A DNA stretch of 64,000 nucleotides from Haliotis rubra (taxonomy: Eukaryota). The translations under genes were made by a program, and so were the position numbers. The stretch's first letter is position 1. The number at the start of each line of letters is the position of its first letter. The stretch lies in contig NW_025765476.1 of the NCBI RefSeq assembly GCF_003918875.1, positions 1 through 64,000 of the forward strand, in the 5' to 3' direction. Under the pieces are notes generated by a model. It was given only the letters and a program-made list of their open reading frames with translations, ran no database searches and was not told where the DNA came from. Below are positions 17,437 to 47,351 of this stretch, one piece after another.

Positions 17437-17758
17437 TACTGGCAAACAAGGATGAATTGAGCACCTGGCAATTGACCTGTATTAACATGCATGAGTGCCG
17501 CCCACTGGAACTTGCCATTGTTACAGAAGGGGCCCCAGGTTGTCCGCGATCAAGTGTAGTGCGACTTGCTACACCGACCAGAGAGTCTTATGAGCAAGGC
17601 GTGTGCAGCTACACGTGGAATCAAATTCATCGTCACGTGCACTAGCCGACATCTGCTCTACCTTCCACAAACCACATGGGTTCGCTCATTGCCGTGCACC
17701 GCCTACTTCTCGTAAACGCGTTCTCTGCGCCGGTCCAACTTGTCCTTGTTTGCCAGTA
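17437..17758. mobile_element. MITE with 16-bp TIR
   Basis: tactggcaaacaagga ... tccttgtttgccagta; absent from the paralogous unit. Confidence 0.6.
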
Positions 17759-17879
17759 TGAGAACAGTCTCTCTGATAAGAACGCCCCCAATAGAACTAT
17801 TCAACTGTGAGTATAATTATGAGAAATCCCAACTTCACTGACTGAGAATTGACTTTGAAACTATTGTCTGTGTATATCA

Positions 17880-18541: not shown

Positions 18542-20653
18542 CTAGTAATACTGGTAGCCGCTCTTGGAGCCTCCGAAACCACCAGCAAGGCCACGGCCGT
18601 ATCCAACGCCGACGACGCCATTTCCGACTCCGAACCCCCCGAATCCCTTTCCGACACCAACTCCATGGCCGACACCAACGTCATGTCCAACTCCGAAGCC
18701 GTTGTTGTAGGGGGTTCCGTGTTGAGTGGCGGCGGCGTGGTTGGTAGCAGCGCCGTGTGCATTAGCATGGGCATTGGAATTGGAGCCATAGTTGTTGTGG
18801 GCGTAGTTGTTGAGGACGTTGGCGCGGGCAGCAGCAGCGTTGTTGTAGTCGTTGTATTTAGAAGCAGCGGCGTTGTTGCTGTCTCCGGCAGCTTTAGCAG
18901 CGCCCTGGCTGTAGTAGTTCGATTTCTTAGCAGCGTTGCCGTTGGCGGCCTGAGCGACGTCATTGTATTTGTAGGCGTTATCAGCGTTGTTGGCGGCGTA
19001 TTTGTCGTTGTTGTGGGCTGCTGCGTTGGCGGCGTCGTTGTAATACCTCTGAGCGTAGTTGTTGGCATTAGAGTGGGCAGCGTTAGCGTTCTGGGCAAAG
19101 TTATCCTTGTAGTCCTTCTTGTTGTAGTTGAGGCGTTCGTAGTTGTTACCGCCGGCGTTGTTGTGGTGGTGGAACTTCTTGACCAGATGATGTTTCTTGG
19201 CAGCGTCGTTGTAATTGCGTCTGTAGTTGTCCTTGGCGTAGGCAGAGTTGGCACTGTCGGCGGCAGCAGCTTGAGCATTGTAAAGGTTGGCAGCATCAGC
19301 ACCGGCGTGGTCGTATCCGTGTCTGTCAGATGCAGCAGCATCGGTGTTGGATCTGTAGGCGTTGTTCTTGTCAGCAGCAGCACCGGATTTGTAGTAGTCG
19401 TTGCCTTGAGCGTTGTTGTAGCCGTTCCTGTGGTAGGCAGCGCCGGCATTGTTTCTCTGGTAATCATTCAGGTGAGATCCATATTTACCATTCCTGACAT
19501 TGGCAGCATTGGCAGCGGAATCATAATGGTTGGCGTGTTGACCCTGGGCGGCGTTGTCGTACAGACCGTGTCCGTTCTGACCATATTGTTGACCATATTG
19601 CTGACCGTATTGTTGACCATATTGTTGACCTTTGCCGTAACCGTTGCCGTAGTTGTTCCCGTAACCGTTGCCTTTTCCGACACCTCCAGTGCCTACGACA
19701 CCAGAGAATCCGCGTGTTCCGTAGACGCCGTGGTTGCCGTGTCCAGCGAGGTTGTGTGCAGCTTGTGCAGCGGCGTTAGCGACGCTGTTTCTGTCGTAGA
19801 CGGCGTTCTTTTTGGCGAAGTTGTCGTACTGATCTTTGGAAGCGTCGTGAGCGTTGTCGTAGTATTTGTTGCTTCCAGCAGCTTCGCTCAACTTGGCAGC
19901 AGCGGCGTGGTTAGCAGCACCGTTGTTGGCAGCGTGGCTGGTTGCGGCACCGTATTTACCGTTTCCGTATTGCTTTGCTGCAGCGCCATGTCCGTACCCA
20001 TTGCCCTTCTGAGCGTGTGCGGCATCGGCGGCGTATTTTTTGTTGGCGTGGTCGCGGCTGGCGTAGTTGGCGGCTCCACTGTGATCACGGTAGTCGCCGA
20101 GGTTGTGAGCACTGCTTGTGTCAAGGATTTCGTAGTCACCATCCTCGTTGGAGTTTTTGTTGTATTTCTTGTCGAAGCCGTAGTTGACATCGGTGTTGAA
20201 AACGTCCCCCTTGTTGTAGTAGTTGTTGTTGGCGTGGTTGTTGTAAGCAGCAGCTCTTGCGGCGTTGTCTTTCCTGTCGTAGTGGTTGGCGGCGGCGTCG
20301 TGGTAGCCGGCTTTGTTGGCGTGTCCGGCGTCACCGTAAGCGTTATTGGCGTGGGCGGCGGCCTTGTTTCCGTAATAGTTGGAGGCAGCGTCTCCCTTGG
20401 CGCCGGCTTTATCAGCTGCTTTGTAGTAGTTGCTGCCGTGGCTGGCGTAGTTGTTGGCAGCTTTGTTGTAGTTGTTGGCGGCGTTGTCGTATGTGTTGTA
20501 TTTCTGGTCAGTGTTTTGATTAGCGTATTGTCCTTTCCCGTAGTTGTTGACGCCGGCTGACAGGTGGCCGTTGTTGGCGGCGGCGCCATAGTTGTCGAGG
20601 TAGTCGCATGTGGCAGCAGCCACACAGATGGCGATGACGGCAATGGAGAAACT
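18542..20653 (-). CDS. Gene B exon 2: secreted Ala/Asn/Gly/Tyr/His-rich structural protein (705 aa with exon 1; MK|SFSIAVIAICVAAATC signal peptide)
   Basis: Open 703-codon exon after acceptor gttttcAG (20655-20654); hydrophobic signal peptide; strong codon bias (AAC, TAC, GCC); polyA signal at 18193-18198; paralogous to C-F. Confidence 0.93.
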   Translation of the reverse strand, partial: SFSIAVIAICVAAATCDYLDNYGAAANNGHLSAGVNNYGKGQYANQNTDQKYNTYDNAANNYNKAANNYASHGSNYYKAADKAGAKGDAASNYYGNKAAAHANNAYGDAGHANKAGYHDAAANHYDRKDNAARAAAYNNHANNNYYNKGDVFNTDVNYGFDKKYNKNSNEDGDYEILDTSSAHNLGDYRDHSGAANYASRDHANKKYAADAAHAQKGNGYGHGAAAKQYGNGKYGAATSHAANNGAANHAAAAKLSEAAGSNKYYDNAHDASKDQYDNFAKKNAVYDRNSVANAAAQAAHNLAGHGNHGVYGTRGFSGVVGTGGVGKGNGYGNNYGNGYGKGQQYGQQYGQQYGQQYGQNGHGLYDNAAQGQHANHYDSAANAANVRNGKYGSHLNDYQRNNAGAAYHRNGYNNAQGNDYYKSGAAADKNNAYRSNTDAAASDRHGYDHAGADAANLYNAQAAAADSANSAYAKDNYRRNYNDAAKKHHLVKKFHHHNNAGGNNYERLNYNKKDYKDNFAQNANAAHSNANNYAQRYYNDAANAAAHNNDKYAANNADNAYKYNDVAQAANGNAAKKSNYYSQGAAKAAGDSNNAAASKYNDYNNAAAARANVLNNYAHNNYGSNSNAHANAHGAATNHAAATQHGTPYNNGFGVGHDVGVGHGVGVGKGFGGFGVGNGVVGVGYGRGLAGGFGGSKSGYQYY

Positions 20654-20896
20654 CTGAAAACAGAATATACACACTTGCTTTAACTTTGAATATCTGTTTG
20701 AGTGGCTCTCAGAATCTACAAGCATTTAATTAAAAATTACAATTCAGGTATCACCTGTACAAAAGCCGCTGATGGGTATGTCGCCATCATTCACATCATC
20801 AGTGTTTATAGTATGGGGGGGAGATAATTTGCATACACATTTTGAAACTGAGCGAACTACTGAAATAGGAAGCAAGACGTTTCAACTGTATCTTAC

Positions 20897-20902
20897 CTTC
20901 AT
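20897..20902 (-). CDS. Gene B exon 1 coding part (ATG AAG, MK) followed by GTAAGA donor; 243-bp phase-0 intron
   Basis: gtcaagATGAAG|gtaaga; the same micro-exon structure occurs in C, D and E. Confidence 0.85.
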
Positions 20903-20973
20903 CTTGACTCCCACAGGTGTTTCTCTGTCTGGAGATGAGATCCAAGTGTGGAGACTCGCCGGCAGTGTCCGTC

Positions 20974-21075
20974 TTTTAAAGCACAAACCATTTCCCATTA
21001 AACTTCACGAGACGCTGATAACGGTAACTGTGCGATCCGCTTCGCTGGACACTCAAGTCTATTGTCGTAAAGTTA
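20974..21075 (-). promoter_or_regulatory. Gene B promoter: TTTAAAA TATA-like box and AACTTTACGAC motif
   Basis: TATA-like sequence at 20974-20980, about 70 bp upstream of the ATG; motif at 21064-21074 is shared with the C/D/E promoters. Confidence 0.55.
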
Positions 21076-21775
21076 TAATTATTCAACAACAGCAACAACA
21101 TCAACATGCCTTTGTTTATGGATTATAAAATAGGAGATGACCCATATACTAAGTAATACAGAAATAGACACCCCACCACCACCACCAAAATACACACCCC
21201 TATAAAAAATTAAATGAAATAAAACAAGAGTACATGGCACGTTTTGTGGATAACGTTTTTTGGCACGGCGTTTCAGAGCTGATTCTTGCTCCTTCGTCAG
21301 TTGAACGTCGTGTCAGTACAATGAATGAATATATATATATAGATTAAAACATGTTTACACACAAGCATAATTTATACCGAAACAAACGCAAACATCGGCA
21401 AAAACGCAAAGACAAAAGAAATGTACTACTATATCCTAGAAAAAGGTGCCCTGATGCCTGCTACTATATTTTCACTAACTCCACACTACCCTTCCCTCCA
21501 CTACCACTATCTCTACCGCTACTTTACCTCTACCCTTTTCTCTGGTACTTCTTTACTATCTACCTGTCCTTCTGTTATCCCTGCCTCTTCTTCAACCTCT
21601 ACTTCTCCTACCTCTGTTCTACCTTATCCCAACTTTTCTTTCTACCTCTACACCGGCCTGTCCTTCTACTGTTATCCCTGTCTCTTCTTCTACCTCTACT
21701 TCTCCTACCTCTGTTCTACCCTATCCCAACTTTTATTTCTACCTCTACATCTACCTGTCCTTCTACTGTTATGCA

Positions 21776-22011
21776 ACCCGTGAAGATCCGGGTTAGAATG
21801 AACCTTCATTAACCCATGCTTGTTGTAAGAGGCGACTAACAGGATCGGGTGGTCAGGCTCGCTGGCTTGGTTGACACATGTCATCGGTTCCCAGTTGCGC
21901 AGATCGATGCTCATGCTGTTAATCACTGGATTGTCTGGTCCAGACTCGATTATTTACAGACCGCTGCCATATAGTTGGAACATTGCTGAGTGCGGTGTAA
22001 AACTAAACTCC
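21776..22011 (+). mobile_element. SINE family 2, inserted in the 97-bp repeat
   Basis: acccgtgaagatccgggttagaa...gtaagaggcgactaac...gcggtgtaaaactaaactc. Confidence 0.85.
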
Positions 22012-23046
22012 CTGCTACTTCTTTTTCTACCTCTGTTCCTACCTCTACCTATCTTTCTACCTCTGTTCTACCCTATCCCAACTTATATTTCCACCTCTGC
22101 TTCTACCCGTCCTTCCTTTGTTTCTACCTCTGCTTATGCTCCTACTACCACTTCTCCTCCTCTTCCTCTGCGACTACCTCTTCTGTTCTACTTCTACTTT
22201 TACTTCATCTACTTCGATTTCAACCTCTGTTTCTACATTTACGTCTACTTCTCATTTAATTCTACCTCTACCCGTATGTGTATGATTCTTTAAAAGTGAA
22301 ACACTGTTTGTATTTATCCGTGTGTTCCATATGATAAGCGTTATTTTGTAGAAAGAAACACGATTCAGATTTAATACACTTTGTATCACAATCGGACAAA
22401 CTTCAATTAAGAAAGTATAATGTCTGATGTCTGATGTAATGTGTTATACACACATCAGTTCCTCCAGAACAACCAAGTAGACATAAGTGAAATACGAGTT
22501 TCACTATCTGTGCACACATGCAGTGTTATAACCAATGACCTACAACATCAACGTTGATACATTTTAAGTTTGCAAAAATATTGTTTGAGTTCTTTTCTAA
22601 TTTTCCCGTGTGTGGTACCTTTAACTAATTAGATAACCTGTGCTTAAAATCGAAGTCAAAGTGTATTCTGGTGTCTTGTATGTTTTCGTTGAAGTATTCT
22701 GTATTGTAATATAGTTTTGCTTGCATAGGCCCGTTTTCGAGAGATTAAAGCAATTTTTACTGGAGTCGGTTATAATTGCTGTATTTGCCTACATATTTCT
22801 GAATGGTTTGTCTCAGCTGTTGTTAAACTGGTCATTATTATTTTCATTTCTTTTTGTTTCCTCTACTGTTTCTTCAGGATATACATCTGCTTTGCATGCT
22901 GAATGTTTTTCGCTTTGAAGACAAATCTGATACATGCACATACGTAAGGCTGATTAAGCTGAATTAATGTTTTATTCATATTTGTAATCAAGGCAAATAA
23001 TTTGTTTGTGTAAAAGTGTCTGTGTGAAGTATCGCGAAACAGAAGA

Positions 23047-23196
23047 GGGACGGTAGGGTAGCCCAGTAGTTAAAGCGTTCGCTCGTCACGCCGAAGAACC
23101 GGGCTCGATGACCCACATGGGTACAGTGTGTGAAGCCCATTTCTGGTGTCCCCCGCCATGATATTGCTGGAATACTGCTCACTCACTCACTCACTC
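23047..23196 (+). mobile_element. SINE family 1
   Basis: Head ggtagggtagcccagtagttaaagcg, body gaagcccatttctggtgtccc, (CTCA)n tail. Confidence 0.85.
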
Positions 23197-23810
23197 AAAA
23201 CAATAGATATTCTTTAATACTGTATTAAAGGAGTACTTAGCCATATACAACATCCTTAAACACGCACCCACAAACACTCATTGGTAAATTTAAGTAATCC
23301 TGACTTATACTGAATTCCAAAAGAAACGCGAATATCACAAGTGTTTGAAATTACATGGAATGAAACATAAAACGGGGATAAGTGGTGTGTTCGATGCTCA
23401 GATGGTCATTCCTCATCGGTTGTGTGTTCGGATGATACCGAAGTGGCTGCGAATGGGGCCATAATCGATACTGGACTGTCATTTCCAATGGCTCTAAGGT
23501 GACGTTAGCAAATGGCGCAATCTATCGTCTTATTTACTTTTACACAAGTCACCTCAGGTTATGAATCAAGATCATTTATGTGTTCACTTATGTGCTGCCA
23601 TGCGCTCTCATACAAATCTTATGGACAAGGTGGTTTCCAAGCTCACGAAGTCCAGATTAAAGAGGTTTCAGTGTATACGTTTATCACGCTGTGACAGGAC
23701 GCTTCACCAGTCGGCGTTAAACTCATGTAAACAAGTATCTGTCAAACTGTAGCTGCTAAATATAGACTTGCATTGTAATGTGCCTCCGTATATGTTTATT
23801 TTTCGTACAT

Positions 23811-23949
23811 CAAGTACATGAACTGCCATCGATAATAGTAAAACAAACCCGAACGAATAAACTATTTGTTTTCGCTCAAGTACATGAACTGCCATCGATA
23901 ATAGTAAAACAAACCCGAACGAATAAACTATTTGTTTTCGCTCAAGTAC
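23811..23949. repeat. 66-bp perfect tandem duplication
   Basis: caagtacatgaactgccatcgataatag... at 23811 and 23877. Confidence 0.9.
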
Positions 23950-24130
23950 CCAAACTGCATGATTTAGGTCGGCATAACCGTTAGTGGCCAAACACAAAAT
24001 GACTGTCACTGAATTAACGTGTGTGTTTAAAAAATTAAGAAGAAAAAAGAAGTTGTTATCCATTAAACGTGTTATTGTATTCATGCTCTTCCAACTTCTA
24101 AAAGCCTTTCAAGAATTTCAGCAGGAAGAC

Positions 24131-24312
24131 GCATTTCGACAAAAAATTATTCAACAGCGGCAGTATAACAAAATGTCTAGTTTTTGTCAGCAAAGTTTTA
24201 TTCATGACACTACATGCTGAACTACAGCATGTAGTGTCATGAATAAAACTTTGCTGACAAACACTAGACATTTTGTTATACTGCCGCTGTTTAATAATTT
24301 TTATTTGAATGC
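24131..24312. repeat. Near-perfect ~90-bp-arm palindrome with a 5-nt loop
   Basis: ...ttattcatgacactacatgctg-aacta-cagcatgtagtgtcatgaataa... Confidence 0.9.
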
Positions 24313-24735
24313 TTTGTGTAGATATTTGAACCACTGACACATCAGGCATGCTGGAATATACAGTGCCGACAAGTCAGCTGCTATTTTATTCTTATTTAAA
24401 TATTCAACCGATCGGGATGACACCATTATGTCTTATCGCTTCAGCTGCTTGGTAAAATATGTTAAGTAGGGCCCAGATTTATTGTCTCAAGGCTTAAATG
24501 ACTGTATTGTGAAGCTGTGACAACCGAAATCCATACTTCTGTACACGTACTATACCTGCACCATTTGTTAATACAGCGATGGGGTAATCCGAAGATTTCA
24601 CCGAGATCGATACCGTCCGGATTAGCCAGGTTTCACTGTACAAAATATAACAAATTTATCCATCAACTATATTGTTGGGCCTTCGTACGCATACACACAC
24701 GCACACACACCCACAAATAGACGCGCACACATATA

Positions 24736-25051
24736 TACTGAATCGCAAAAGAAACGTCACCTTTCTAAACCAAATGCAAAATGTTGTTCTTACAAGGTGG
24801 CGTTTTATTATGATTGTAACGTCTTGTTAACATGTCATGGATGCCACACACGATACTGACCTTCAGGTATCTTAATGGAACCATTTTTAGTGATTTTGTT
24901 TGTGTGAAGTCTAAATGTGATTCCCGAACATGTGTAAACCATAACTGTCAAGTTTGAACTCAGTCCTCCGGTTTGATTGTTAATTAGAGTGAATCAAAGT
25001 ATGTGCTTTCAGAAACCTAAATCGATGTGCCGTTTCTTTCGAGTTTCAGTA
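24736..25051. mobile_element. Tc1/mariner-type MITE
   Basis: TIRs tactgaatcgcaaaagaaacg / cgtttctttcgagtttcagta in TA context. Confidence 0.55.
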
Positions 25052-25637
25052 TATATGTATACATGTGGGTGGGTGTTTGACTGTCAGTGAGTATTACACT
25101 GTATGGTTTTCTTTTCCCTTGACTACACAGGGTTCTGATATGCATAATGTTTCGGAATTCAGAAGGTAAAGATAAGCATAAGTTTTTCAATCAATATACT
25201 TACATATATAGATCATTTACTTCACTGAATTTTATTTACATGAATAATTTAAGTAAAGAGAGTGTGTCTTCTGGCTAATGTCACCCTGATTGGTAATTTA
25301 GGTAAGTTGAAGTATTTCTGATTTAAATTGAATTCCAAAAGCAATGCGAATATAACAAATGTTTGAAATTTCATGGAATAAAACGTAAAACGGGGCGACA
25401 TGGGATGTTCGATGCTCATACGACCATTCTCATCGGTAGTTTGTTCTGATGATACCGAAGTGGTTGCTAATAGAGGCCATACTTGATACTGAAATGTCAT
25501 TTCCCATGGCGTGTAAGTGACGTTACCAAATGGCGTAATATGACATCGTCTTATCGACATTATCGCCAGACACATCTGGTTGTGAATAAAGATCATTTAT
25601 GTGTTCACTGATTGACTTCTTTTCATGCACGTTTTCA

Positions 25638-25657
25638 AACACACACACACACACACA

Positions 25658-25693
<36 letters not shown>

Positions 25694-25710
25694 CACACAC
25701 ATATATATAT
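25638..25710. repeat. (CA)n(CGCA)n(TA)n compound microsatellite
   Basis: Seen directly. Confidence 0.95.
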
Positions 25711-26618
25711 CTATCTCTTGATTCACACTGAATCCGTTTTATATGATTAGCGTTTCTTTTGGAACTGCGTATATGTTACATACCACTGTTATGCTAGTTA
25801 CATGACGTGTGCCGATGTTAATCAGGTTAATTTTACAGACATAATTGCAGTTTGAGTTATACAGATAGTTATAATTATCTCACATCTTTTTGATGTAACT
25901 ATTTGTCAGGAAGCTACAGTAACTAATAAAAATACGTGTATTTGTACAGTGCTGACAAGTAACAGTTCATATGTACAAGGAAATACAAGGGTTTATGAAA
26001 CATAGCGTTGAAAGAGATGTGTTTTGAGTCTGTTTTTTGAAGAATGGCATATATTAAACATACGATATTTGCATACGACTGGATATTAATTCGTTTTCTT
26101 TTTTATAACAAAAAGGTCATGCCTGGGATTAATTTCTATATGGAGGTAGTGTTTGCTATAGCACAATCCGAGTATATCATGAGTATATCTATATCTGATG
26201 AATGTGGGATTAAGTCGCTTTTCTTTAATATTTACATAATTATTTTAAAGAAAGTGCCTTAACCCAATATAAAAAAATGCCATTTCGGAAAAATCAAAAC
26301 TAACGTTGCAAGTAAATGTGGCAATGTCATGTAGGTTTTGTATTGTCATGAATATTTCGTCAAATACCCATAAAATAAAATTATCCACAAAAAAATCAGA
26401 ATAAATAATCATGATAATATTCATAACATAAATTCCAAAGAGTACCGAAACCTAAGTGACATGAGAAGTAGATAATACAATCCACTCTACCATATCAACT
26501 GTAACGATATGCGAAGGCAAAATGAAACAGTTAATATTCATTACTAACCTGTCATTAAAGGCCGATGTATATGAATATGTATGCTGTGTCCCCTATGTAT
26601 CCCCTACCCCCGGGGATT

Positions 26619-26771
26619 GTGAGGTAACGCGGCCATCTGCCACCACCCGTCTCTCTACGGCCTCGGTTTAATGACGGAGCTGCCATTGTTTGATTAAAGA
26701 AGGTGGTCGCGGTGTGATCCCTCGTTATGGTCCATTTAAACTTTACGACGATGAAGACGATGGTTTATAAG
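26619..26771 (+). promoter_or_regulatory. Gene C promoter: GTGAGGTAAC, GCCATTGT, TTAAACTTTACGACG, TATAAG
   Basis: Motifs at 26619-28, 26682-89, 26736-50 and 26766-71, in the same order as in the D and E promoters. Confidence 0.75.
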
Positions 26772-26850
26772 GAGTGTTGATGCAGGGAGACAGCAGATCA
26801 GCCAGCCCTTCAGCGGACACAGGCACAGACACAGACAGGCAACAGTCAGA

Positions 26851-26856
26851 ATGCAG
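26851..26856 (+). CDS. Gene C exon 1 coding part (ATG CAG, MQ) followed by GTGAGA donor
   Basis: About 80 bp downstream of the TATA; phase 0 into exon 2; same layout as the paralogues. Confidence 0.85.
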
Positions 26857-27434
26857 GTGAGATACTTTTACATCTCTTGAAGTAAAATGCGGAACAGGAT
26901 TTGACCAAAATGCGTCTGCTTGCTTTGTATTTTGTATTAAGAAACGAAATAGATTTTAACAAAAATAAATCTGCTGTTCATGCTTGGGTTAGAAACCAAA
27001 AATCATTTGACACTGAAAAGCTTCGGAGTGAGAAACGTAACTTGATTTGAAACTCAAAGTCAGAAACGAAAAATCATTACACATTGATGATCTTATGGTA
27101 TATTGTAGTAGGAAACGAACTATGATTGACAAAAAGTGCGCTTGATAAATATAAGTTGCAAGAACGAAATGTTATTCAGCAATGCAATTCTTTGTGAAAG
27201 AGAAAAAAGAACCCGAATCAAATTAAACGCAGTAGTATGAAATATACGCGAATAAACCAGTCTTTGTATATGGTAGAACTTACAGGACTAAAATTCAGAT
27301 TCCTTCATGTTCGTTCGGGACAAACGAAATATGTCTGCAGCGCATATTTTCAAAAAAAACAAAGTTTGAGGGTCAAGTAAAATATGAATAAACAAACCCA
27401 TAATTTGACCAACGTTCAACAATGTGTTTTTCAG

Positions 27435-29582
27435 TGTCTCCTCGTCGCCGTCGTCGCTCTGTGCGGCATTGTCGTATCAAGCATGTCCTACAACAACAAC
27501 TTTGGCGCTGCCAGACAGCTTGGCCACGTTGCCTCGGGTCTCAACGACTACGGCAAGGGACAATATGGAGGCGCCGAGGGTCTTCGTCGTTACGGAAGCT
27601 ACAACAAAGCGGCCAATGTCAACAATAAAGCCGCCGACAACTACGCCGCCCGCGGTAACAACTACCACAAGGCTGCTGACCATGCCAGCGCAAAGGGGGA
27701 CGCCGCCTCCAACTACTACGGCCACAAGAACGCCGCTCACGCTGACAAAGCCTCCGGTGCTGCCGCTCTGGCCAACAAAGCCAACTACCACGATGCTGCT
27801 GCCACAAAGTACGCAAGGAAGGACGGTGCATCCAAAGCTGCTGCCAACAACGACTACGCCAACAACAACTACTACAGAAAGGGGGACGTCTACAACACTG
27901 GAGTCCACTACGGCTTCGACAAGAAGTATAACAAGAACGCCGATGAGGGCGGTGACTACGAAATTCTTGATGACAGCTCTTCCCACAACCTCGACGAATA
28001 CCGTGATAAGAGCAAGGCTTACAGCGCTGCCAACAGCGACCACGCCGCCAACAAATATGCTGCTGATCGCTCTCATGCTCTGAAAGACAGCAAGTACGGT
28101 AAGGACGCCAGCAAGGCTCAATACGGTAATGGTAAATACGGCTCTGCTGCTAGTCAGGCTGCCAAGAACGGTGCTGCCAACCACGGTTACGACGGCAAAC
28201 TTAACGAAGCTGCCGGAAGCAACAAATACTACGCCAACGCCCACGATGCTGCCGTCGACAAACATGACGAGTTCGCTGGCAAGAACGCCTACTACAACAG
28301 AAGGAACGCTGCTAATGCTGCTGCACAGGCTGCCAAAAACATCGCCGGATATGGAGGTCTCGCCCATGGTGCTCATGGCGTCGCTGGTGGTGCTGGTTTC
28401 CAAGGTGTATCTGGAGGTGTTCTCGGCGGAGTAGGATACGGCAAGGGCTACGGTAACCAGTACGGCCGTGGATACAACAATGGCTACCTTGGACATGACG
28501 CACACAACAACAAGTACTACGGTGCTGCCGTCCAAGGTCAACACGCTAACCACTTTGATGGTGCTTCCAATGCCGCCCTCGCCAAAACCGGAGGATACGG
28601 ATCTAAGCTGGGTGACTCAAGCCGAAACAAGGCCGGTGCCGCCTATCACAGAGACGGCTACAACAACGCTCACGCCAATGACTACTACAAGTCTGGAGCT
28701 GCAGCTGCCAACAACAACGCCTACAGATACAATAAGGACGGTGCCGCTGCCGACAACCATGGATTTAGTCACTCCGGTGCCGACGCTGCCAGTCTCTATG
28801 ACAACAAAGCCGCCGCTCACGACAATGCCAAATCTGCCTACGCCAAAGACGACTACAGACGTAAGTACAACGAGGGTGCCAAGAAACACCATCTGGTCAA
28901 GAAGTTCCACCATCATTCTAAAGCCGGCGGCAACAACTACGAGCGTCTCAACTACGACAAGAAGGACTACAGGGACAACTTTGGACAGAACGCCAATGCC
29001 GCTCATGCCAACGCAAAGAAATACTCTCAGAACCTGTACCAGAACGCTGCCAATGCCGCCGCCCATAACAACGACAAATATGCGGCCAACCACGCCAACA
29101 AAGCCTCCAACTACTACGATGCTGCTGATGCTGCCAACGGCAACGCCGCAAAGAAATCCAACTACTACAACAAAAACGCCGCTGCCTCTGCTGGTGCTGC
29201 CAACGCTGCTGGCAAATCCTATTATGGCAACCACAACAAAGCCGCTGCTACGTATGCCAAGGGTCTCAACGACTACGCCCACAACCAGTACGGCAACAAC
29301 GGTCACGCCTACAACGCCAAACATGCTGCTGCCAACCACGCCGGTGCCGCCCACAACACCCCAAGCTACGGTTACGGTGTGGGACACGGACTTGGAGGAG
29401 CTGGACGTGGAGTTGTCGGCCTTGGTCACGGCGTCAGTGGATACGGTAATGGTTTCGGCAGAGGAGTTGTCGGCCTTGGAAATGGCGTTGGTGGATTCCG
29501 TAACGGAGTTGCCGGCCTTGGTAGAGGCTTTGGCTCTGGTCAAAGTTATGGAGGTTACAACCAGTACCCTTACTACGGGTAA
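27435..29582 (+). CDS. Gene C exon 2: secreted Ala/Asn/Gly/Tyr/His/Lys-rich structural protein (717 aa total)
   Basis: Acceptor tttttcAG at 27433-34; signal peptide MQCLLVAVVALCGIVVSS; open 715 codons; AATAAA at 30107-30112. Confidence 0.95.
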   Translation, partial: CLLVAVVALCGIVVSSMSYNNNFGAARQLGHVASGLNDYGKGQYGGAEGLRRYGSYNKAANVNNKAADNYAARGNNYHKAADHASAKGDAASNYYGHKNAAHADKASGAAALANKANYHDAAATKYARKDGASKAAANNDYANNNYYRKGDVYNTGVHYGFDKKYNKNADEGGDYEILDDSSSHNLDEYRDKSKAYSAANSDHAANKYAADRSHALKDSKYGKDASKAQYGNGKYGSAASQAAKNGAANHGYDGKLNEAAGSNKYYANAHDAAVDKHDEFAGKNAYYNRRNAANAAAQAAKNIAGYGGLAHGAHGVAGGAGFQGVSGGVLGGVGYGKGYGNQYGRGYNNGYLGHDAHNNKYYGAAVQGQHANHFDGASNAALAKTGGYGSKLGDSSRNKAGAAYHRDGYNNAHANDYYKSGAAAANNNAYRYNKDGAAADNHGFSHSGADAASLYDNKAAAHDNAKSAYAKDDYRRKYNEGAKKHHLVKKFHHHSKAGGNNYERLNYDKKDYRDNFGQNANAAHANAKKYSQNLYQNAANAAAHNNDKYAANHANKASNYYDAADAANGNAAKKSNYYNKNAAASAGAANAAGKSYYGNHNKAAATYAKGLNDYAHNQYGNNGHAYNAKHAAANHAGAAHNTPSYGYGVGHGLGGAGRGVVGLGHGVSGYGNGFGRGVVGLGNGVGGFRNGVAGLGRGFGSGQSYGGYNQYPYYG

Positions 29583-34020: not shown

Positions 34021-36198
34021 CTAGTAGTAGGGATAGTGTCCCACCCCTGTGTTCACTCCGAACCCTCCCACAGCACCAAATCCCTTCCCAAGGCTAGAAA
34101 CTCCCTTTATAACGCCTGCAGCGTTGTTGAAGCTACCGACGTGGTTTCCAAGACCGACAACTCCTTTACCCACACCGACCCCGTTACCGAAGCCGCGAAA
34201 GCCGTGACCAAGGCCGACAACTCCATGTGCAGATCCTCCGTGTCCGACACCGTAACCGTAGCTTAGGGTGTCGTGGGTGGCATCGGCATGGTGGGCAGCA
34301 GCACCGTGAGCGGCGTTGTAGGCGTGGCCGTTGTTACCGTACTGGTTATGGGCGTAGTCGTTGAGACCCTTGGCATACGTAGCAGCGGCGTTGTTGTGGT
34401 TGTCATAATAGGATTTGCCAGCAGCGTTGGCAGCACCAGCAGAGGCAGCGGCATTTTTGTTATAGTAGTTGGATTTCTTTGCGGCGTTTCCGTTGGCAGC
34501 ATCAGCAGCATCGTAGTAGTTGGAGGCTTTGTTGGCGTGGTTGGCAGCATATTTGTCGTTGTTATGGGCGGCGGCGTTGGCAGCGTTCTGGTACAGGTTC
34601 TGAGAGTACTTCTTTGCGTTGGCATGAGCGGCATTGGCGTTCTGTCCAAAGTTGTCCCTGTAGTCCTTCTTGTCGTAGTTGAGACGCTCGTAGTTGTTGC
34701 CGCCGGTTTTAGAATGATGGTGGAACTTCTTGACCAGATGGTGTTTCTTGGCACCCTCGTTGTACTTACGTCTGTAGTCGTCCTTGGCGTAGGCAGATTT
34801 GGCATTGTCGTGAGCGGCGGCTTTGTTGTCATAGAGACTGGCAGCGTCGGCACCGGCGTGACTGAAGCCATGGTTGTTGGCAGCGGCACCGTCCTTGTTG
34901 TATCTGTAGGCGTTGTTGTTGCCAACTGCAGCTCCAGACTTGTAGTAGTCGTTGGCGTGAGCGTTGTTGTTACCGTCTCTGTGATAGGCGGCACCGGCCT
35001 TGTTTCGGCTTGAGTCACCAAGTTTAGATCCGTATCCTCCGGTTTTGGCGACGGCGGCATTGGCAGCACCATCATAGTGGTTAGCGTGTTGACCTTGGAC
35101 GGCGGCACCGTAGTACTTGTTGTTGTGTGCGTCATGTCCCAGGTAGCCATTGTTGTATCCGTGGCCGTACTGGTTACCGTAGCCCTTGCCGTATCCTACT
35201 CCTTTGCCGAGAAGACCTCCAGACACACCTAGAACACCAGCACCACCAGCGACGCCATGGGCACCATGGGCGAGACCTCCATATCCGGCGATGTTTTTGG
35301 CAGCCTGTGCAGCAGCATTAGCAGCGTTCCTTCTGTTGTAGTAGGCGTTCTTGCCAGCGAAGTCGTCATGTTTGTTGACGGCAGCATCGTGGGCGTTGGC
35401 GTAGTATTTGTTGCTTCCGGCAGCTTCGTTAAGTTTGCTGTCGTAACCGTGGTTGGCAGCACCGTTCTTGGCAGCGTGGCTAGCAGCAGAGCCGTATTTA
35501 CCGTTACCATACTGAGCCTTGCTGGCGTCCTTACCGTACTTGCTGTCTTTCAGAGCATGAGATCGATCAGCAGCATATTTGTTGGCGGCGTGGTCTCTGT
35601 TGGCAGCGCTGTAAGCCTTGTTCTTATCACGGTATTCGTCGAGGTTGTGGGAAGAGCTGTCATCAAGAATTTCGTAGTCCCCGCCCTCATCGGCGTTCTT
35701 GTTATACTTCTTGTCGAAGCCGTAGTGGACTCCGGTGTTGTAGACGTCCCCCTTTCTGTAGTAGTTGTTGTTGGCGTAGTCGTTGTTGGCAGCAGCTTTG
35801 GAGGCATCGTCCTTCTTTGCGTACTTTGTGGCAGCAGCATCGTGGTAGTTGGCTTTGTTGGCCAGAGCGGCAGCACCGAAGGCTTTGTCAGCGTGAGCGG
35901 CGTTCTTGTGGCCGTAGTAGTTGGAGGCGGCGTCTCCCTTTGCGCTGGCATGGTCAGCAGCCTTGTGGTAGTCGTTACCGTGGGCGGCGTAGTTGTCTGC
36001 GGCTTTGTTGGCGGCATTGGCGGCTTTGTTGTAGCTTCCGTAACGACGAAGACCCTCGGCGCCTCCATATCGTCCTTTGCCGTAGTCGTTGAGACCCGAG
36101 GCAACGTGGCCAAGCTGTGCGGCAGCTCCAAAGTTGTTGTTGTAGGACATGCTGGATACGACAACGCCGCACAGAGCGACGAAGGCGACGAGGAGACA
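34021..36198 (-). CDS. Gene D exon 2: secreted Ala/Asn/Gly/Tyr/His/Lys-rich structural protein (727 aa total)
   Basis: Acceptor tttttcAG at 36200-36199; CLLVAFVALCGVVVSS signal peptide followed by the 709-aa ORF; highly similar to C/E/F; candidate polyA signal at 33613-33618. Confidence 0.95.
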   Translation of the reverse strand, partial: CLLVAFVALCGVVVSSMSYNNNFGAAAQLGHVASGLNDYGKGRYGGAEGLRRYGSYNKAANAANKAADNYAAHGNDYHKAADHASAKGDAASNYYGHKNAAHADKAFGAAALANKANYHDAAATKYAKKDDASKAAANNDYANNNYYRKGDVYNTGVHYGFDKKYNKNADEGGDYEILDDSSSHNLDEYRDKNKAYSAANRDHAANKYAADRSHALKDSKYGKDASKAQYGNGKYGSAASHAAKNGAANHGYDSKLNEAAGSNKYYANAHDAAVNKHDDFAGKNAYYNRRNAANAAAQAAKNIAGYGGLAHGAHGVAGGAGVLGVSGGLLGKGVGYGKGYGNQYGHGYNNGYLGHDAHNNKYYGAAVQGQHANHYDGAANAAVAKTGGYGSKLGDSSRNKAGAAYHRDGNNNAHANDYYKSGAAVGNNNAYRYNKDGAAANNHGFSHAGADAASLYDNKAAAHDNAKSAYAKDDYRRKYNEGAKKHHLVKKFHHHSKTGGNNYERLNYDKKDYRDNFGQNANAAHANAKKYSQNLYQNAANAAAHNNDKYAANHANKASNYYDAADAANGNAAKKSNYYNKNAAASAGAANAAGKSYYDNHNNAAATYAKGLNDYAHNQYGNNGHAYNAAHGAAAHHADATHDTLSYGYGVGHGGSAHGVVGLGHGFRGFGNGVGVGKGVVGLGNHVGSFNNAAGVIKGVSSLGKGFGAVGGFGVNTGVGHYPYY

Positions 36199-43877: not shown

Positions 43878-46001
43878 TTACCCGTAGTAAGGGTACTGGT
43901 TATAACCTCCATAGCCTCTACCAAGGCCGGCAACTCCGTTCCCGAATCCACTGACGCCGTTACCAAGGCCGGCAACTCCGTTCCCGAATCCACTGACGCC
44001 GTTACCAAGGCCGACAACTCCACGGCCAGCTCCTCCAAGTCCGTGTCCGACACCGTACCCGTAGCTGGGGGCGTTGTGGGCGGCACCGGCGTGGTTGACA
44101 GCAGCACCGTGAGCGACGTTGAAAGCGTGACCGTTGTTACCGTACTGGTTGTGGGCGTTGTCGTTGAGGCTCTTGGCCTTGGCAGCAGCGGCGTTGTTGT
44201 GGTTGTAATGAAGAGACTTGGCGGCAGCGTTGGCAGCACCAGCAGAGGCAGCGGCGTTTTTGTTGTAGTAGTTGGATTTCTTTGCGGCGTTTCCGTTGGC
44301 AGCATCAGCAGCATCGTAGTAGTTGGAGGCTTTGTTGGCGTGGTTGGCCGCATATTTGTCGTTGTTATGGGCGGCGGCATTGGCAGCGTTCTGGTACAGG
44401 TTCTGAGAGTATTTCTTTGCGTTGGCATGAGCGGCATTGGCGTTCTGTCCAAAGTTGTCCCTGTAGTCTTTCTTGTCGTAGTTGAGACGCTCGTAGTTGT
44501 TGCCGCCGGCCTTAGAATGATGGTGGAACTTCTTGACCAGATGGTGTTTCTTGGCACCCTCGTTGTACTTTCGTCTGTAGTCGTCCTTGGCGTAGGCAGA
44601 TTTGGCATTGTCGTGAGCGGCGGCTTTGTTGTCATAGAGACTGGCAGCGTCGGCACCGGCGTGACTAAATCCATGGTTGTTGGCAGCGGCACCGTCCTTA
44701 TTGTATCTGTAGGCGTTGTTGTTGGCAGCTGCAGCTCCAGACTTGTAGTAGTCGTTGGCGTGAGCGTTGTTGTAGCCGTCTCTGTGATAGGCGGCACCAG
44801 CCTTGTCTCGGCTAGAGTCAGCCAGTTTAGATCCGTATCCTCCAGATTTGGCAAGGGCGGCATTGGCAGCACCATCATAGTGGTCAGCGTGTTGACCTTG
44901 GGCGCCGGCATCGTAGTACTTGTTGTTGTGTGCATCATGTCCGAGGTAGCCATTGTTGTATCCGTGGCCGTACTGGTTACCGTAGCCCTTGCCGTATCCT
45001 ACTCCTTTGCCGAGAAGACCTCCAGATACACCTAGAACACCAGCACTACCAGCGACGGCATGGGCACCATGGGCGAGACCTCCATATCCGGCGATGTTGT
45101 TGGCAGCCTGTGCAGCAGCATTAGCGGCGTTCCTTCTGTTGTAGTAGGCGTTCTTGCCAGCGAACTCGTCATGTTTGTTGACGGCAGCATCGTGGGCGTT
45201 GGCGTAGTATTTGTTGCTTCCGGCAGCTTCGTTGAGTTTGCCGTCGTAGCCGTGGTTGGCAGCACCGTTCTTGGCAGCCTGACTAGCTGCAGAGCCGTAT
45301 TTACCGTCACCGTATTGAGCCTTGCTGGCGTCCTTACCGTACTTGCTGTCTTTCAGAGCATGAGAGCGACCAGCAGCATATTTGTTGGCGGCGTGGTCTC
45401 TGTTGGCAGCGCTGTAAGCCTTGTTCTTATCACGGTATTCGTCGAGGTTATGGGAAGAGCTGTCATCAAGAATTTCGTAGTCACCGCCATCATCGGCGTT
45501 CTTGTTATACTTCTTGTCGAAGCCGTAGTGGACTCCGGTGTTGTAGACGTTCCCCTTTCTGTAGTAGTTGTTGTTGGCGTAGTCGTTGTTGGCAGCAGCT
45601 TTGGAGGCATCGTCCTTCCTTGCGTACTTTGTGGCAGCAGCATCGTGGTAGTTGGCTTTGTTGGCCAGAGCGGCAGCACCGGAGGCTTTGTCAGCGTGAG
45701 CGGCGTTCTTGTGGCCGTAGTAGTTGGAGGCGGCGTCTCCCTTTGCGCTGGCATGGTCAGCAGCCTTGTGGTAGTCGTTACCGTGGGCGGCGTAGTTGTC
45801 GGCGGCTTTGTTGGCGGCATTGGCCGCTTTGTTGTAGCTTCCGTAACGACGAAGACCCTCGGCGTCTCCATATTGTCCCTTGCCGTAGTCGTTGAGACCC
45901 GAGGCGACGTGGCCAATCTGCCTGGCAGCGCCAAAGTTGTTGTTGTAGGACATGCTGGATACGACAACGCCGCACAGAGCGACGACGGCGACGAGGAGAC
46001 A
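43878..46001 (-). CDS. Gene E exon 2: secreted Ala/Asn/Gly/Tyr/His/Lys-rich structural protein (709 aa total)
   Basis: Acceptor ttttcAG at 46003-46002; signal peptide CLLVAVVALCGVVVSS; intact ORF; polyA signal at 43456-43461. Confidence 0.95.
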   Translation of the reverse strand, partial: CLLVAVVALCGVVVSSMSYNNNFGAARQIGHVASGLNDYGKGQYGDAEGLRRYGSYNKAANAANKAADNYAAHGNDYHKAADHASAKGDAASNYYGHKNAAHADKASGAAALANKANYHDAAATKYARKDDASKAAANNDYANNNYYRKGNVYNTGVHYGFDKKYNKNADDGGDYEILDDSSSHNLDEYRDKNKAYSAANRDHAANKYAAGRSHALKDSKYGKDASKAQYGDGKYGSAASQAAKNGAANHGYDGKLNEAAGSNKYYANAHDAAVNKHDEFAGKNAYYNRRNAANAAAQAANNIAGYGGLAHGAHAVAGSAGVLGVSGGLLGKGVGYGKGYGNQYGHGYNNGYLGHDAHNNKYYDAGAQGQHADHYDGAANAALAKSGGYGSKLADSSRDKAGAAYHRDGYNNAHANDYYKSGAAAANNNAYRYNKDGAAANNHGFSHAGADAASLYDNKAAAHDNAKSAYAKDDYRRKYNEGAKKHHLVKKFHHHSKAGGNNYERLNYDKKDYRDNFGQNANAAHANAKKYSQNLYQNAANAAAHNNDKYAANHANKASNYYDAADAANGNAAKKSNYYNKNAAASAGAANAAAKSLHYNHNNAAAAKAKSLNDNAHNQYGNNGHAFNVAHGAAVNHAGAAHNAPSYGYGVGHGLGGAGRGVVGLGNGVSGFGNGVAGLGNGVSGFGNGVAGLGRGYGGYNQYPYYG

Positions 46002-47351
46002 CTGAAAATACATAATTATGAATAAACTGAAGTTTAAAGCCTGTTGGTAAGATGGTACACTTGATGATGGTTTGAAAAAAACTGTTTGGAATCATCATTG
46101 CAGCTTTTCACGTTTTACTCTTACAAATTGCTTTTGCAATTCTTCATTGAATTCTAAGGCACATATCCATATTGCTCCATTGAATTTTCTAGTTATTAAT
46201 ACACACTGTATGTAAGACTGATTTTGTTATTATCAAGTAAGAATCTTGTGTTGAAGTGATCATTGTTTCTGGATGCCACCATCATTCAAGCCACATCACA
46301 GTAGGGAATACTCATTGAGTTTCACTCATCGTACAGATTCGAACCCATGCGTCTACTGAACGTGCCAACGCTTTAACCATTAACCTATCCCATTATACTT
46401 TAATGTGTGATGTTGATGTACAGTATAGACATGTGTATCACTTATAACTGCACTTTAACTTTTAATTTAATTATGAAAATGCCGAAACGCTTTAGACATG
46501 AATACTGGAAAGTGTTTTTCATAGCACGATCTTACATTTACTTTACTTCAAGGATGTGGATATGTTTACAGATAAAATCGATTTGAGAAAGAGTGTGGTA
46601 AGATCATCATTATCTTTAAGCAATCAAGCGTAGACTGAAGAAACCTTTCACAGAGAAATCGCATCCTGTACGCTTATTATACACCAGGAGGCCACCGGCC
46701 GTTCTCTAGTTCCAAACATTATTGCACTATCATGGGATATCGCCAAATCTCATAGATAAATGAACAGAATGACACTGGTACCTACATAACCATAAGGGCA
46801 AAAAGACCTCATATGTCGCCAGTTTCATAATTGCAATTCCTAAGACTTGATCCAGTTATGTGAATGCAAAGCGAAGAGTTTATTTCTTGTCATAAAACAG
46901 TTACAAAACATGCACAATAATTTTGTGAACAAAATGTATTTTGTAAGTTTCATAAAGAAACATACAGAAAGTACTGTTTATGTTCCAGGTTATAAAATCT
47001 ACTGAAAGGAAGTAACTTTTATAGAAAACCCGGTTCTACTGTACATTTCATACATCGTTAAAATATTTAGTTCTGTATTTAGTCTCCCCTTTTCTTTATT
47101 AGATAAAATAGATTATTGGTCGAATATGTTGTGGGTCGAGTAAACATCATATATATGGGATTAAAATGCACCGTTACAATAAGGAATCAAGTGAGAGTAT
47201 AATCTGATGTAATGTTTTAATCTATATTTAAGCCATGTTTTCATTCACTATAGTCACCAGAAACTGCACACGGGTGTAGTGTCAGTTTGAATTTCTCCGT
47301 TAAGACTACAGTGCCAAATGATATGCAGTCATATTTGTGTTTAGAAGGTCT

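What the first reader, a model, noticed from the sequence alone, without database searches (positions are those of the whole stretch)
18542..29582. Zero indels over ~560 low-complexity residues between ~60%-identical paralogues; length changes confined to linker and tail
Seen: genes B and C align without a gap across all 290 residues of arm 1 and about 270 residues of arm 2 (58/100 identical in the first 100 by hand count). The central linker is 57 aa in B (with QQYG x4), 53 aa in C and 54 aa in D/E/F, and the tails differ widely. Asn/Ala-rich sequence full of AAC/GCC runs normally accumulates slippage indels, so this implies strong selection on arm length and register (inference), consistent with a molecular ruler or paired-strand structure.
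Basis: seen in the sequence. Interest (0 to 1): 0.8.

Follow-up and report, generated by a model that had tools for sequence, protein, structure and literature searches.

The report
Indel-free arms in snail rod proteins
The cluster encodes an undescribed, gastropod-wide family of secreted proteins whose two 256-residue, probably helical arms show no insertion or deletion in 15 full-length members, although their sequences have diverged to under 20% identity.

Summary

- **B versus C:** they align without a gap over 289 residues (arm 1, 63% identity) and 268 residues (arm 2, 67%). dS is about 1 and dN/dS is 0.18-0.31. All length change lies in the signal region, the Gly-rich linker (58/54/55 aa) and the tail.
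- **Family:** a profile search found 28 relatives, all gastropod where named (Lottia, Patella, Haliotis, Gigantopelta, Nucella, Pomacea, Plakobranchus). None has a Pfam family, a solved relative or a paper.
- **Family-wide result:** in 15 full-length members at 17-35% identity, the gap-free runs are exactly 256 + 256 columns. That is about 8,500 inferred substitutions and no indel. An aligner-independent offset test agrees.
- **Control:** pseudogene A carries 13 indels in 494 nt of the same arm.
- **Premise:** the "slippage-prone low complexity" premise is weak. The arms have biased composition but are not repetitive (no tandem run above 3 units).
- **Structure:** AlphaFold2 (low confidence) and a significant 7/14-residue periodicity point to long alpha-helical rods. 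Each is interrupted mid-arm by a conserved KK[FY]...GG motif. A beta hairpin is not supported.

Function and tissue remain unknown.

The parts
1..750 (+). Copy A: a B-like 3' fragment (arm 2 plus tail), cut by the window edge. Decayed pseudogene.
   Evidence: It is 90.5% identical to B. It has 13 indel events in 494 aligned nt of arm 2, 12 of them frame-breaking.
18542..20725 (-). Gene B ORF (727 aa). The real exon 2 probably starts at 20653, after a TTTTCAG acceptor.
19733..20599 (-). B arm 1 (289 aa)
   Evidence: No gap against C-F.
19559..19732 (-). B Gly-rich linker (58 aa, QQYG x4)
18755..19558 (-). B arm 2 (268 aa)
   Evidence: No gap against C-F.
18545..18754 (-). B Gly/Val/Tyr-rich tail (70 aa)
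   Evidence: 8 gap openings against C.
26764..26772 (+). TATA-like element upstream of gene C (inferred)
   Evidence: Sequence read. No transcript evidence.
26851..26856 (+). Coding part of gene C exon 1 (ATG CAG), followed by a GT donor
   Evidence: The Lottia gene model splices after codon 2 at the same place. Inferred, not shown by RNA.
26857..27434 (+). Gene C intron (GT...TTTTTCAG)
   Evidence: The acceptor is conserved in B-F.
27435..29582 (+). Gene C exon 2: the rest of the signal peptide (CLLVAVVALCGIVVSS), then the mature protein and the stop codon
27492..28358 (+). C arm 1 (289 aa, gap-free against B)
27564..28331 (+). Arm 1 core: 256 columns without a gap in 15 full-length family members
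27903..27977 (+). Mid-arm motif 1, HYGFDKKYNKNADEGGDYEILD. Modelled as a beta hairpin in one AF2 run.
   Evidence: Most conserved block of arm 1. The hairpin was not reproduced in the arm-only model.
28359..28520 (+). C Gly-rich linker (54 aa)
   Evidence: The family-wide length is 17-105 aa. A population/paralogue indel lies at 28427.
28521..29324 (+). C arm 2 (268 aa, gap-free against B)
28533..29300 (+). Arm 2 core: 256 columns without a gap in 15 full-length members
28887..28955 (+). Mid-arm motif 2, HLVKKFHHHSKAGGNNYERLNY
   Evidence: Most conserved block of arm 2. It has a weak profile match to motif 1.
29325..29579 (+). C Gly/Tyr-rich tail (85 aa)
   Evidence: Variable in length. Indels and repeat-number joints appear in read contigs.
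34021..36150 (-). Gene D ORF (709 aa from MSYNNN)
43878..46013 (-). Gene E ORF (711 aa)
60372..62492 (-). Gene F ORF (706 aa)
62437..62451 (-). Site of an extra A in F (GCCAGACAAGCTTGG against GCCAGACAGCTTGG). It puts the signal peptide out of frame with the rest of the protein.
   Evidence: This is either a pseudogene or an assembly error. Not resolved.

Best explanation
The window holds a tandem cluster of six copies: A is decayed, B-E are intact and F is frameshifted. All belong to an undescribed gastropod-specific family of secreted proteins.

Each protein is built as follows: signal peptide, short variable head, arm 1, Gly-rich linker, arm 2, Gly/Tyr-rich tail. Each arm is most likely a pair of alpha-helices of about 100-120 residues with heptad-type periodicity. 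The two helices are joined mid-arm by a conserved turn motif (Y.F.KK[FY]......E.GG in arm 1, KK[FY].H.K..GG.N.E.L.Y in arm 2).

Because long helices pack in register, within the molecule or between molecules of an assembly, any insertion or deletion would shift everything beyond it. Such changes are therefore removed by selection. Amino-acid replacements that keep the helix are tolerated.

The flexible linker, head and tail carry no such constraint and change length freely. In the window's species the family has expanded and become rich in Ala, Asn, Tyr and His, which suits a cross-linkable extracellular structural material.

Shown here: the length invariance, purifying selection, the family's range, the periodicity, and the lack of any known family. 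Inferred: the helical rod, in-register packing as the cause, and the extracellular structural role.
For: - **B versus C:** 557 arm columns, no gap, dN/dS 0.18-0.31, dS about 1.
- **Relatives:** 28 found, gastropod where named.
- **Gap-free runs:** 256 + 256 columns in 15 full-length members. Tree length is 16.6 substitutions per site, about 8,500 substitutions.
- **Register test:** measured from one anchor per arm, offset 0 is best in every 30-residue block out to +/-120-150 residues. This does not depend on a gapped aligner.
- **Variable parts in the same proteins:** linker 17-105 aa, tail 28-273 aa, head 22-121 aa.
- **Pseudogene A:** 13 indels in 494 nt of arm 2.
- **Read contigs:** contigs at 85% likeness or more from four runs list coding indels only in the linker, at the arm 2/tail border and in the tail.
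- **AF2:** helices 31-132, 169-288, 354-465 and 499-604, with disordered linker and tail. The arm-only model is also helical.
- **Periodicity:** family-profile autocorrelation peaks at lag 14 in both arms. Multiples of 7 are enriched (p = 0.001 and 0.008). Period 3.5 in arm 1 has p = 0.001.
- **Motif position:** the motif sits at the same relative place in both arms (118-130 and 123-133 of 256).
- **Secretion:** signal-peptide-like N-termini occur throughout the family.
- **Published concept:** coiled coils that diverge in sequence but keep their length act as molecular spacers (PMC5082667; see also PMC4350178).
Against: - Both AF2 models are of low confidence (mean pLDDT 51 and 50.5, pTM 0.23 and 0.15).
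- The Atlas's own predicted model of a Lottia member has mean pLDDT 0.31.
- The mid-arm beta hairpin appears in only one of the two AF2 models.
- Hydrophobicity spectra of single helices show only a marginal 3.5 peak.
- Arm 2 lacks a significant 3.5-residue amplitude.
- Structure searches return only generic long helices.
- Nothing here shows which helices pack against which, or that the protein forms a fibre.
- There is no expression, tissue or proteomic evidence. The family's motifs are absent from the held text of the Lottia and Haliotis laevigata shell proteomes and of a limpet mucus proteome.
- One metatranscriptome contig does carry in-frame arm deletions, -4 aa in arm 1 and -6 aa in arm 2.
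Confidence: 0.55

Rival explanations
1. Ordinary folded domain, no ruler. The arms are compact helical-bundle domains under normal purifying selection, and their fixed length is a by-product of having very few loops. No distance or register needs to be kept between partners.
For: dN/dS of 0.18-0.31 is ordinary. AF2 gives only four long helices and therefore few loops.
Against: Zero indels over about 8,500 substitutions at 17-35% identity is far from what loop-bearing globular families show; that comparison rests on general knowledge and was not measured here. The two invariant runs are equal in length (256/256), with the motif at mid-arm in both. The heptad-type periodicity fits rods better than globules.
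Confidence: 0.2
2. Paired beta strands. Each protein is a giant self-complementary beta hairpin, with arm 1 pairing strand-to-strand with arm 2. This is the reading in the first reader's other note.
For: The arms are of equal length. A flexible Gly-rich linker lies between them. Length is strictly conserved.
Against: Both AF2 runs give helices for the arms. Composition is 20% Ala with few beta-branched residues. There is no period-2 signal in any spectrum. The significant periodicity is 7/14, not 2.
Confidence: 0.05
3. Disordered entropic spacer. The arms are intrinsically disordered hydrophilic chains, and selection acts on their contour length alone.
For: pLDDT is low everywhere. The composition is very hydrophilic and sequence turnover is fast.
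Against: A pure length constraint would allow compensating indels anywhere. Instead, the register relative to one anchor is kept in every 30-residue block. The 7/14 periodicity also implies regular structure.
Confidence: 0.1
4. Artefact. The gap-free alignment comes from aligner inertia on biased sequence, or from gene conversion between copies.
For: C-F are homogenised exactly over exon 2, so their agreement is not independent. Biased composition can hide small shifts.
Against: B and C differ at 35% of arm residues with dS about 1, so there is no recent conversion between them. The offset test needs no gapped aligner. The same result holds between species and between two ancient clades.
Confidence: 0.03

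Closest known systems
Length-conserved, sequence-divergent coiled-coil 'molecular spacers' (reviewed in PMC5082667; evolutionary patterns in PMC4350178)
   Same: Sequence turns over fast while length is strictly conserved. There is heptad-type periodicity. Flanking regions are flexible and variable.
   Different: A coiled coil is not demonstrated here. These proteins are secreted, gastropod-specific and biased in composition (Ala/Asn/Tyr/His in this species). No partners or spanned distance are known.
Intermediate-filament proteins and keratins (fixed-length rod segments, variable linker, Gly-rich head and tail, paired type I/II genes). From general knowledge.
   Same: The layout is the same: variable Gly-rich ends, fixed-length helical segments and a variable central linker. 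Two ancient clades coexist in the same genomes, and they are adjacent in Lottia.
   Different: No sequence relationship: no Pfam filament hit. A signal peptide is present, so the protein is extracellular. Each arm is broken by a conserved KK[FY]...GG motif that is unknown in intermediate filaments.
SMC/Rad50-type arms (two long helices of matched length that fold back on each other). From general knowledge.
   Same: There are two segments of equal length (256/256) on either side of a central non-helical element. Arm length is conserved.
   Different: There are no ATPase heads and no hinge domain. Antiparallel pairing of arm 1 with arm 2 is only a possibility here.
Extracellular alpha-helical structural proteins of invertebrates (bee, ant and hornet silks, mantis ootheca, whelk egg-capsule proteins). 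From general knowledge.
   Same: They are secreted, Ala-rich and probably helical, are encoded by small multigene families, and have ends suited to cross-linking.
   Different: No sequence similarity was found. This family occurs in gastropods without egg capsules (limpets, abalone). The tissue and the material are unknown.
[quoted passage not shown]
   Same: The name matches the composition, and it comes from abalone.
   Different: Unrelated. GAAP peptides are Ala/Gly/Ser-rich with pI 12 (for example AFASATAR), and none of this family's motifs occur in the held text of that proteome's files.

Membership tests
Coiled-coil molecular spacer/rod proteins | Heptad (7-residue, 3.5 per turn) periodicity | tested here: met
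   Family-profile autocorrelation peaks at lag 14 in both arms. Multiples of 7 are enriched (p = 0.001 in arm 1, p = 0.008 in arm 2). The 3.5 amplitude is significant in arm 1 only (p = 0.001), not in arm 2 (p = 0.47). Single-helix hydrophobicity spectra are only marginal.
Coiled-coil molecular spacer/rod proteins | Length conserved while sequence diverges | tested here: met
   256 + 256 gap-free columns in 15 members at 17-35% identity. The offset test agrees.
Coiled-coil molecular spacer/rod proteins | Alpha-helical supercoiled structure | tested here: inconclusive
   AF2 predicts four helices of 100-120 residues, but at pLDDT about 51. Structure searches give only generic long-helix matches with Z of 7.1 or less.
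Coiled-coil molecular spacer/rod proteins | Sets a distance between partners or within an assembly | not testable with these tools
   No partners, tissue or material are known.
Intermediate filament proteins | Filament rod domain detectable by sequence (Pfam Filament) | tested here: not met
   No Pfam family for B or C at E <= 1. No filament family in any of 26 members. No solved relative.
Intermediate filament proteins | Cytoplasmic or nuclear, without a signal peptide | tested here: not met
   Hydrophobic signal-like N-termini occur in the window genes and in the relatives.
Repeat-based silk-like or low-complexity proteins (the automatic names fibroin-, sericin-, spidroin- and filaggrin-like) | Tandem sequence repeats make up the bulk of the protein | tested here: not met
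   In the arms no tri-nucleotide run exceeds 3 units, and only 1-3 two-copy units of 6-9 nt occur per gene. Repeats are confined to the linker (QQYG x4 in B) and the tail.
GAAP shell-matrix protein of Haliotis | Sequence similarity to GAAP_HALAI or its H. laevigata homologue | tested here: not met
   GAAP peptides and composition differ (31.8% A, 17.8% G, 21.3% S, pI 12). The strings YGFDKK, NNYERL, HLVKKF and DYEILD are absent from 6.2 million characters of supplementary text (some files were truncated).

The most novel reading that the evidence does not exclude
This would be a previously unrecognised class of extracellular 'ruler' proteins, dating from the origin of gastropods. Two equal 256-residue helical arms, each hinged at a conserved mid-arm motif, would pair in strict register, arm with arm or clade I with clade II partner. 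They would build a fixed-length rod, roughly 17 or 38 nm depending on the folding, that sets the spacing of an extracellular material. The abalone-type expansion rich in Tyr and His would be its cross-linked structural version. The single lineage with arm deletions, which has one in each arm, would then be a case of compensation.
Probability: 0.3. Interest if true: 0.8.

Novelty: new variant of a known kind. Interest (0 to 1): 0.62.

Why it matters
The result defines a conserved, gastropod-wide secreted protein family that current annotation mislabels as filaggrin-, sericin- or fibroin-like, and for which no family model, structure or paper was found.

Its arms are an extreme case of length conservation without sequence conservation. 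That makes it a clean natural system for asking how register constraints shape protein evolution.

If the rod and assembly reading is right, the family points to an unstudied extracellular material of snails, and possibly a new coiled-coil biomaterial. The expanded Tyr/His-rich abalone-type cluster would be an obvious candidate for expression and mechanical study.

Tried and rejected
**Searches that found no known family**
- Pfam on B, C and all 26 members gave nothing relevant.
- A profile search of solved structures gave nothing.
- Foldseek against PDB with the full model gave nothing. VIA-align with the arm model gave only generic long helices.
- Atlas feature and structure searches gave only compositional look-alikes.

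**Literature**
- Searches by accession numbers and by motif strings were blank.
- The '238000' hits in the Lottia shell proteome supplements are intensity values, not the gene id.
- GAAP was rejected as a relative.
- The limpet pedal-mucus supplement has no motif hit. The radula paper has no held supplements.

**Internal duplication of the arms**
- BLASTP shows no similarity.
- hhalign matches only the KK[FY]..GG motif, E = 0.21.
- An ungapped profile scan is borderline. The question stays open and I make no claim.

**Periodicity in single sequences**
- Spectra of protein C alone are not significant.

**Gaps in partial members**
- P0024's 17-residue gap is a gene-model artefact, because the genome encodes the segment uninterrupted.
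- The gaps in P0020 and P0009 start at the GG motif, where the Lottia gene has an intron. They are probably splice-model errors. P0020 could not be fetched.

**Close orthologues and expression**
- A second word search restricted to residues 165-330 found only Gigantopelta. Close orthologues from sister species could therefore not be compared as proteins.
- The RNA-run search found no run recorded as RNA, so expression is untested.


Full report
**What is in the window.** The stretch is eukaryotic. ORF listing and tblastn find six copies of one gene:
- A: 1-~750, + strand, a fragment
- B: 18542-20725, - strand
- C: 27384-29582, + strand
- D: 34021-36150, - strand
- E: 43878-46013, - strand
- F: 60372-62492, - strand

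The window has no N. The long ORFs on the opposite strand and in other frames of each gene are a by-product of the codon make-up, not genes.

**Gene structure (inferred).** Reading the DNA upstream of C shows a TATA-like element near 26764-26772. It is followed by ATG CAG and a GT donor at 26851-26858, an intron, and a TTTTTCAG acceptor, with exon 2 starting at 27435. The protein therefore starts MQ-CLLVAVVALCGIVVSS-MSYNNN..., which looks like a signal peptide. The acceptor and the signal-peptide codons are shared by B-F. The Lottia gene model splices after codon 2 in the same way. This structure rests on inference, because no RNA run was available.

**Check of the observation.** Alignment of B-F and a codon-level count give, for B versus C:

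| Region | Columns | Gap openings | Identity | dN | dS | dN/dS |
|---|---|---|---|---|---|---|
| Arm 1 | 289 | 0 | 63% | 0.27 | 1.0 | 0.27 |
| Arm 2 | 268 | 0 | 67% | 0.22 | 1.25 | 0.18 |
| Linker | 62 | 4 | - | - | - | - |
| Tail | - | 8 | - | - | - | - |

Linker lengths are 58, 54 and 55 aa for B, C and D/E/F, and tails are 70-94 aa.

C-F are 93-95% identical in the arms. However, their similarity begins within about 10 nt of the exon 2 acceptor and ends within about 10 nt of the stop codon. Introns and flanks show no detectable similarity except between E and F. Coding dS is only 0.07-0.16, so this pattern points to homogenisation limited to the exon. C-F therefore do not count as independent observations.

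**Check of the premise.** The arms have biased composition: A 20%, N 13-16%, G 12-14%, Y 10%. They are not repetitive DNA. No tri-nucleotide unit is repeated more than three times, and only one to three two-copy units of 6-9 nt occur per gene.

Mutation does supply indels, though. Copy A is 90.5% identical to B and has 13 indel events in 494 aligned nt of arm 2, 12 of them frame-breaking. Its many indels could in principle be assembly errors, but the inserted strings are not homopolymer slips.

**Relatives.**
- A word search found only Lottia gigantea LOTGIDRAFT_238000.
- A profile of C, B and two Lottia paralogues, scored against 1.84 billion representatives, found 28 proteins.
- Where a source names them, they are all gastropods: Lottia (238000, 238001), Patella vulgata, Haliotis cracherodii and rufescens, Gigantopelta aegis, Nucella lapillus (two adjacent genes), Pomacea canaliculata and Plakobranchus ocellatus.
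- One record labelled Enterococcus is a 993-nt contig and is presumably contamination.
- Their names are 'hypothetical', 'filaggrin-2-like', 'sericin 1-like' or 'fibroin heavy chain-like'.
- No Pfam family, solved relative or paper was found.
- Paralogues are tandem in Lottia as well. A Haliotis cracherodii locus holds a second family member upstream of the clade II gene.

**Two ancient clades.** A tree of the arm columns splits the family into two clades with 99% SH-aLRT support. Each clade contains a patellogastropod, a caenogastropod and a heterobranch. The window genes and Gigantopelta fall in clade I, and Haliotis P0003 falls in clade II. The duplication therefore predates the gastropod crown group.

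**The main result.** In the 26-sequence alignment, the 15 full-length members are only 17-35% identical to C. They have no gap in two runs of exactly 256 columns each. In C these runs are mature residues 28-283 and 351-606, window 27564-28331 and 28533-29300. The tree length over these 512 columns is 16.6 substitutions per site, about 8,500 substitutions.

In the same proteins the linker ranges from 17 to 105 aa, the tail from 28 to 273 aa and the head from 22 to 121 aa, each with many gap runs. BLASTP of C against Gigantopelta at 35% identity shows the same constant offsets through both arms.

I also tested register without a gapped aligner, to exclude aligner inertia. Each arm was anchored at its conserved motif, and 30-residue blocks were scored at offsets -8 to +8 over all 105 pairs. 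Offset 0 gave the highest mean score in every block, out to -120/+150 and -135/+135 residues. It was the best offset in 30-100% of pairs, against 6% expected by chance.

**Exceptions among partial or irregular members.**
- **P0024:** its 17-residue gap is an annotation artefact. The genome encodes the segment without interruption.
- **P0020 and P0009:** their gaps start at the GG motif, where the Lottia gene has an intron. They are probably splice-model errors, but this was not checked.
- **L004/P0023:** this metatranscriptome contig has real-looking in-frame deletions, -4 aa in arm 1 and -6 aa in arm 2, relative to its 54%-identical relative P0006. It is the only lineage with arm indels and it has one in each arm. 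That is suggestive of compensation or of relaxed constraint. It is a single case, on a contig that is broken further upstream.

**Evidence from reads.** Contigs from four public runs were laid on C at 85% likeness or more. They come from four coded organisms and include paralogues. The coding indels listed lie at 28427 (linker), 29314-29322 (arm 2/tail border), and 29350 and 29424 (tail), with repeat-number joints in the tail. None is listed inside the arm cores. One contig of run X8 (depth 72.7) does skip 133 nt at 28912-29046, inside arm 2; the skip is not a multiple of 3, so I read it as an assembly joint rather than an allele. Thirteen weaker indel rows were not displayed, so this evidence is supportive rather than exhaustive.

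**Structure.**
- AlphaFold2 on the 26-sequence alignment gives helices 31-132, 169-288, 354-465 and 499-604. It models short beta hairpins over the two conserved motifs and leaves the linker and tail disordered. Confidence is low (mean pLDDT 51, pTM 0.23).
- Arm 1 alone is again helical but without the hairpin (pLDDT 50.5).
- Structure searches return nothing, or only generic long helices such as tropomyosin at Z = 7.1.
- Hydrophobicity spectra of single helices are marginal.
- The family-profile autocorrelation peaks at lag 14 in both arms. In column-shuffle tests, the lag-14 excess has p = 0.001 in both arms. Multiples of 7 have p = 0.001 (arm 1) and p = 0.008 (arm 2). The 3.5-residue amplitude has p = 0.001 in arm 1 but p = 0.47 in arm 2. 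The results hold largely unchanged with the motif columns removed.
- No period-2 signal appears anywhere.
- The two arms have the same plan. The only strongly conserved block sits mid-arm: FDKK at 118 and GG at 129 in arm 1, and KKFH at 123 and GG at 132 of 256 in arm 2. The only profile-profile match between the arms pairs these two motifs (E = 0.21, not significant).
- An ancient internal duplication is therefore possible but not shown.

**Explanation.** The best-supported reading is that each arm consists of long, heptad-patterned alpha-helices joined by a conserved turn. These helices pack in register, either within the molecule or in a larger assembly. An indel would shift everything beyond it, so indels are purged while helix-compatible replacements accumulate. 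The Gly-rich head, linker and tail are flexible and free to vary in length.

[quoted passage not shown] The overall layout also resembles intermediate-filament proteins. That is an analogy only, since the defining sequence domain is absent and these proteins carry signal peptides.

**Function.** The role is not established. The Ala/Asn/Tyr/His-rich arms and Gly/Tyr-rich ends in this species, together with the six-copy expansion, suggest a cross-linkable extracellular structural material.

The family's motifs do not occur in the held text of the Lottia shell proteome, the Haliotis laevigata shell proteome or a limpet pedal-mucus proteome. GAAP, the abalone shell protein with a similar-sounding composition, is unrelated.

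**Organism.** Earlier notes of this scan call the genome blacklip abalone. I could confirm only that the window shares dispersed repeats at 77-93% identity with a Haliotis cracherodii locus.

**Limits.**
- There is no expression or tissue evidence.
- The structure models are of low confidence.
- Only 15 full-length members are available.
- Close orthologues from sister species were not retrievable as proteins.
- The statement that typical protein families would show many indels at this divergence rests on general knowledge. It was controlled here only internally, by the linker, tail and pseudogene.

Noticed in passing
window 1-750 (+): Copy A is a decayed B-like pseudogene fragment. It has 13 small indels in 494 nt of arm 2 and extra repeat units in the tail, and it is cut by the window edge.
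   Followed up: partly
window 62437-62451 (-): Copy F has one extra A shortly after the signal-peptide cleavage region. The signal peptide and the mature protein are therefore in different frames. This is either a pseudogene or an assembly error.
   Followed up: partly
window 27425-29591 and the matching parts of D, E, F: Similarity among C, D and E/F (93-95%) starts within about 10 nt of the exon 2 acceptor and ends just after the stop codon. Introns and flanks are unalignable except between E and F (86.7% over 3.4 kb). This suggests gene conversion confined to the coding exon.
   Followed up: partly
L001 (Lottia) 10001-12564, 15300-17761, 21237-22564; Nucella genes 028225/028226: Clade I and clade II genes lie next to each other in Lottia, and two clade II paralogues are adjacent in Nucella. 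The tandem arrangement is therefore old. Whether the two clades work as partners is unknown.
   Followed up: partly
L004 834-1907 (metatranscriptome contig): This is the only relative with in-frame arm deletions, and it has two: -4 aa in arm 1 and -6 aa in arm 2. This may be compensation, relaxed constraint or a poor contig.
   Followed up: partly
window 4000-6200 and 10300-12300 (+): Long C+T-rich simple-sequence tracts (GC skew down to -0.79, AT skew -0.6) create spurious Ser/Leu/Pro-rich ORFs.
   Followed up: no
window 58347-58441 (+): ARAGORN calls a 95-nt tRNA-Thr (TGT)-like sequence. It may be a tRNA gene with an intron or a tRNA-derived repeat.
   Followed up: no
window 18665-20560 (+), 27477-28553 (-), 60411-62546 (+) and similar: Very long ORFs lie antisense to, or out of frame with, each family gene. 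They are rich in Val/Gly/Ser or Thr/Pro. They result from stop-poor codon composition and there is no evidence that they are genes.
   Followed up: no
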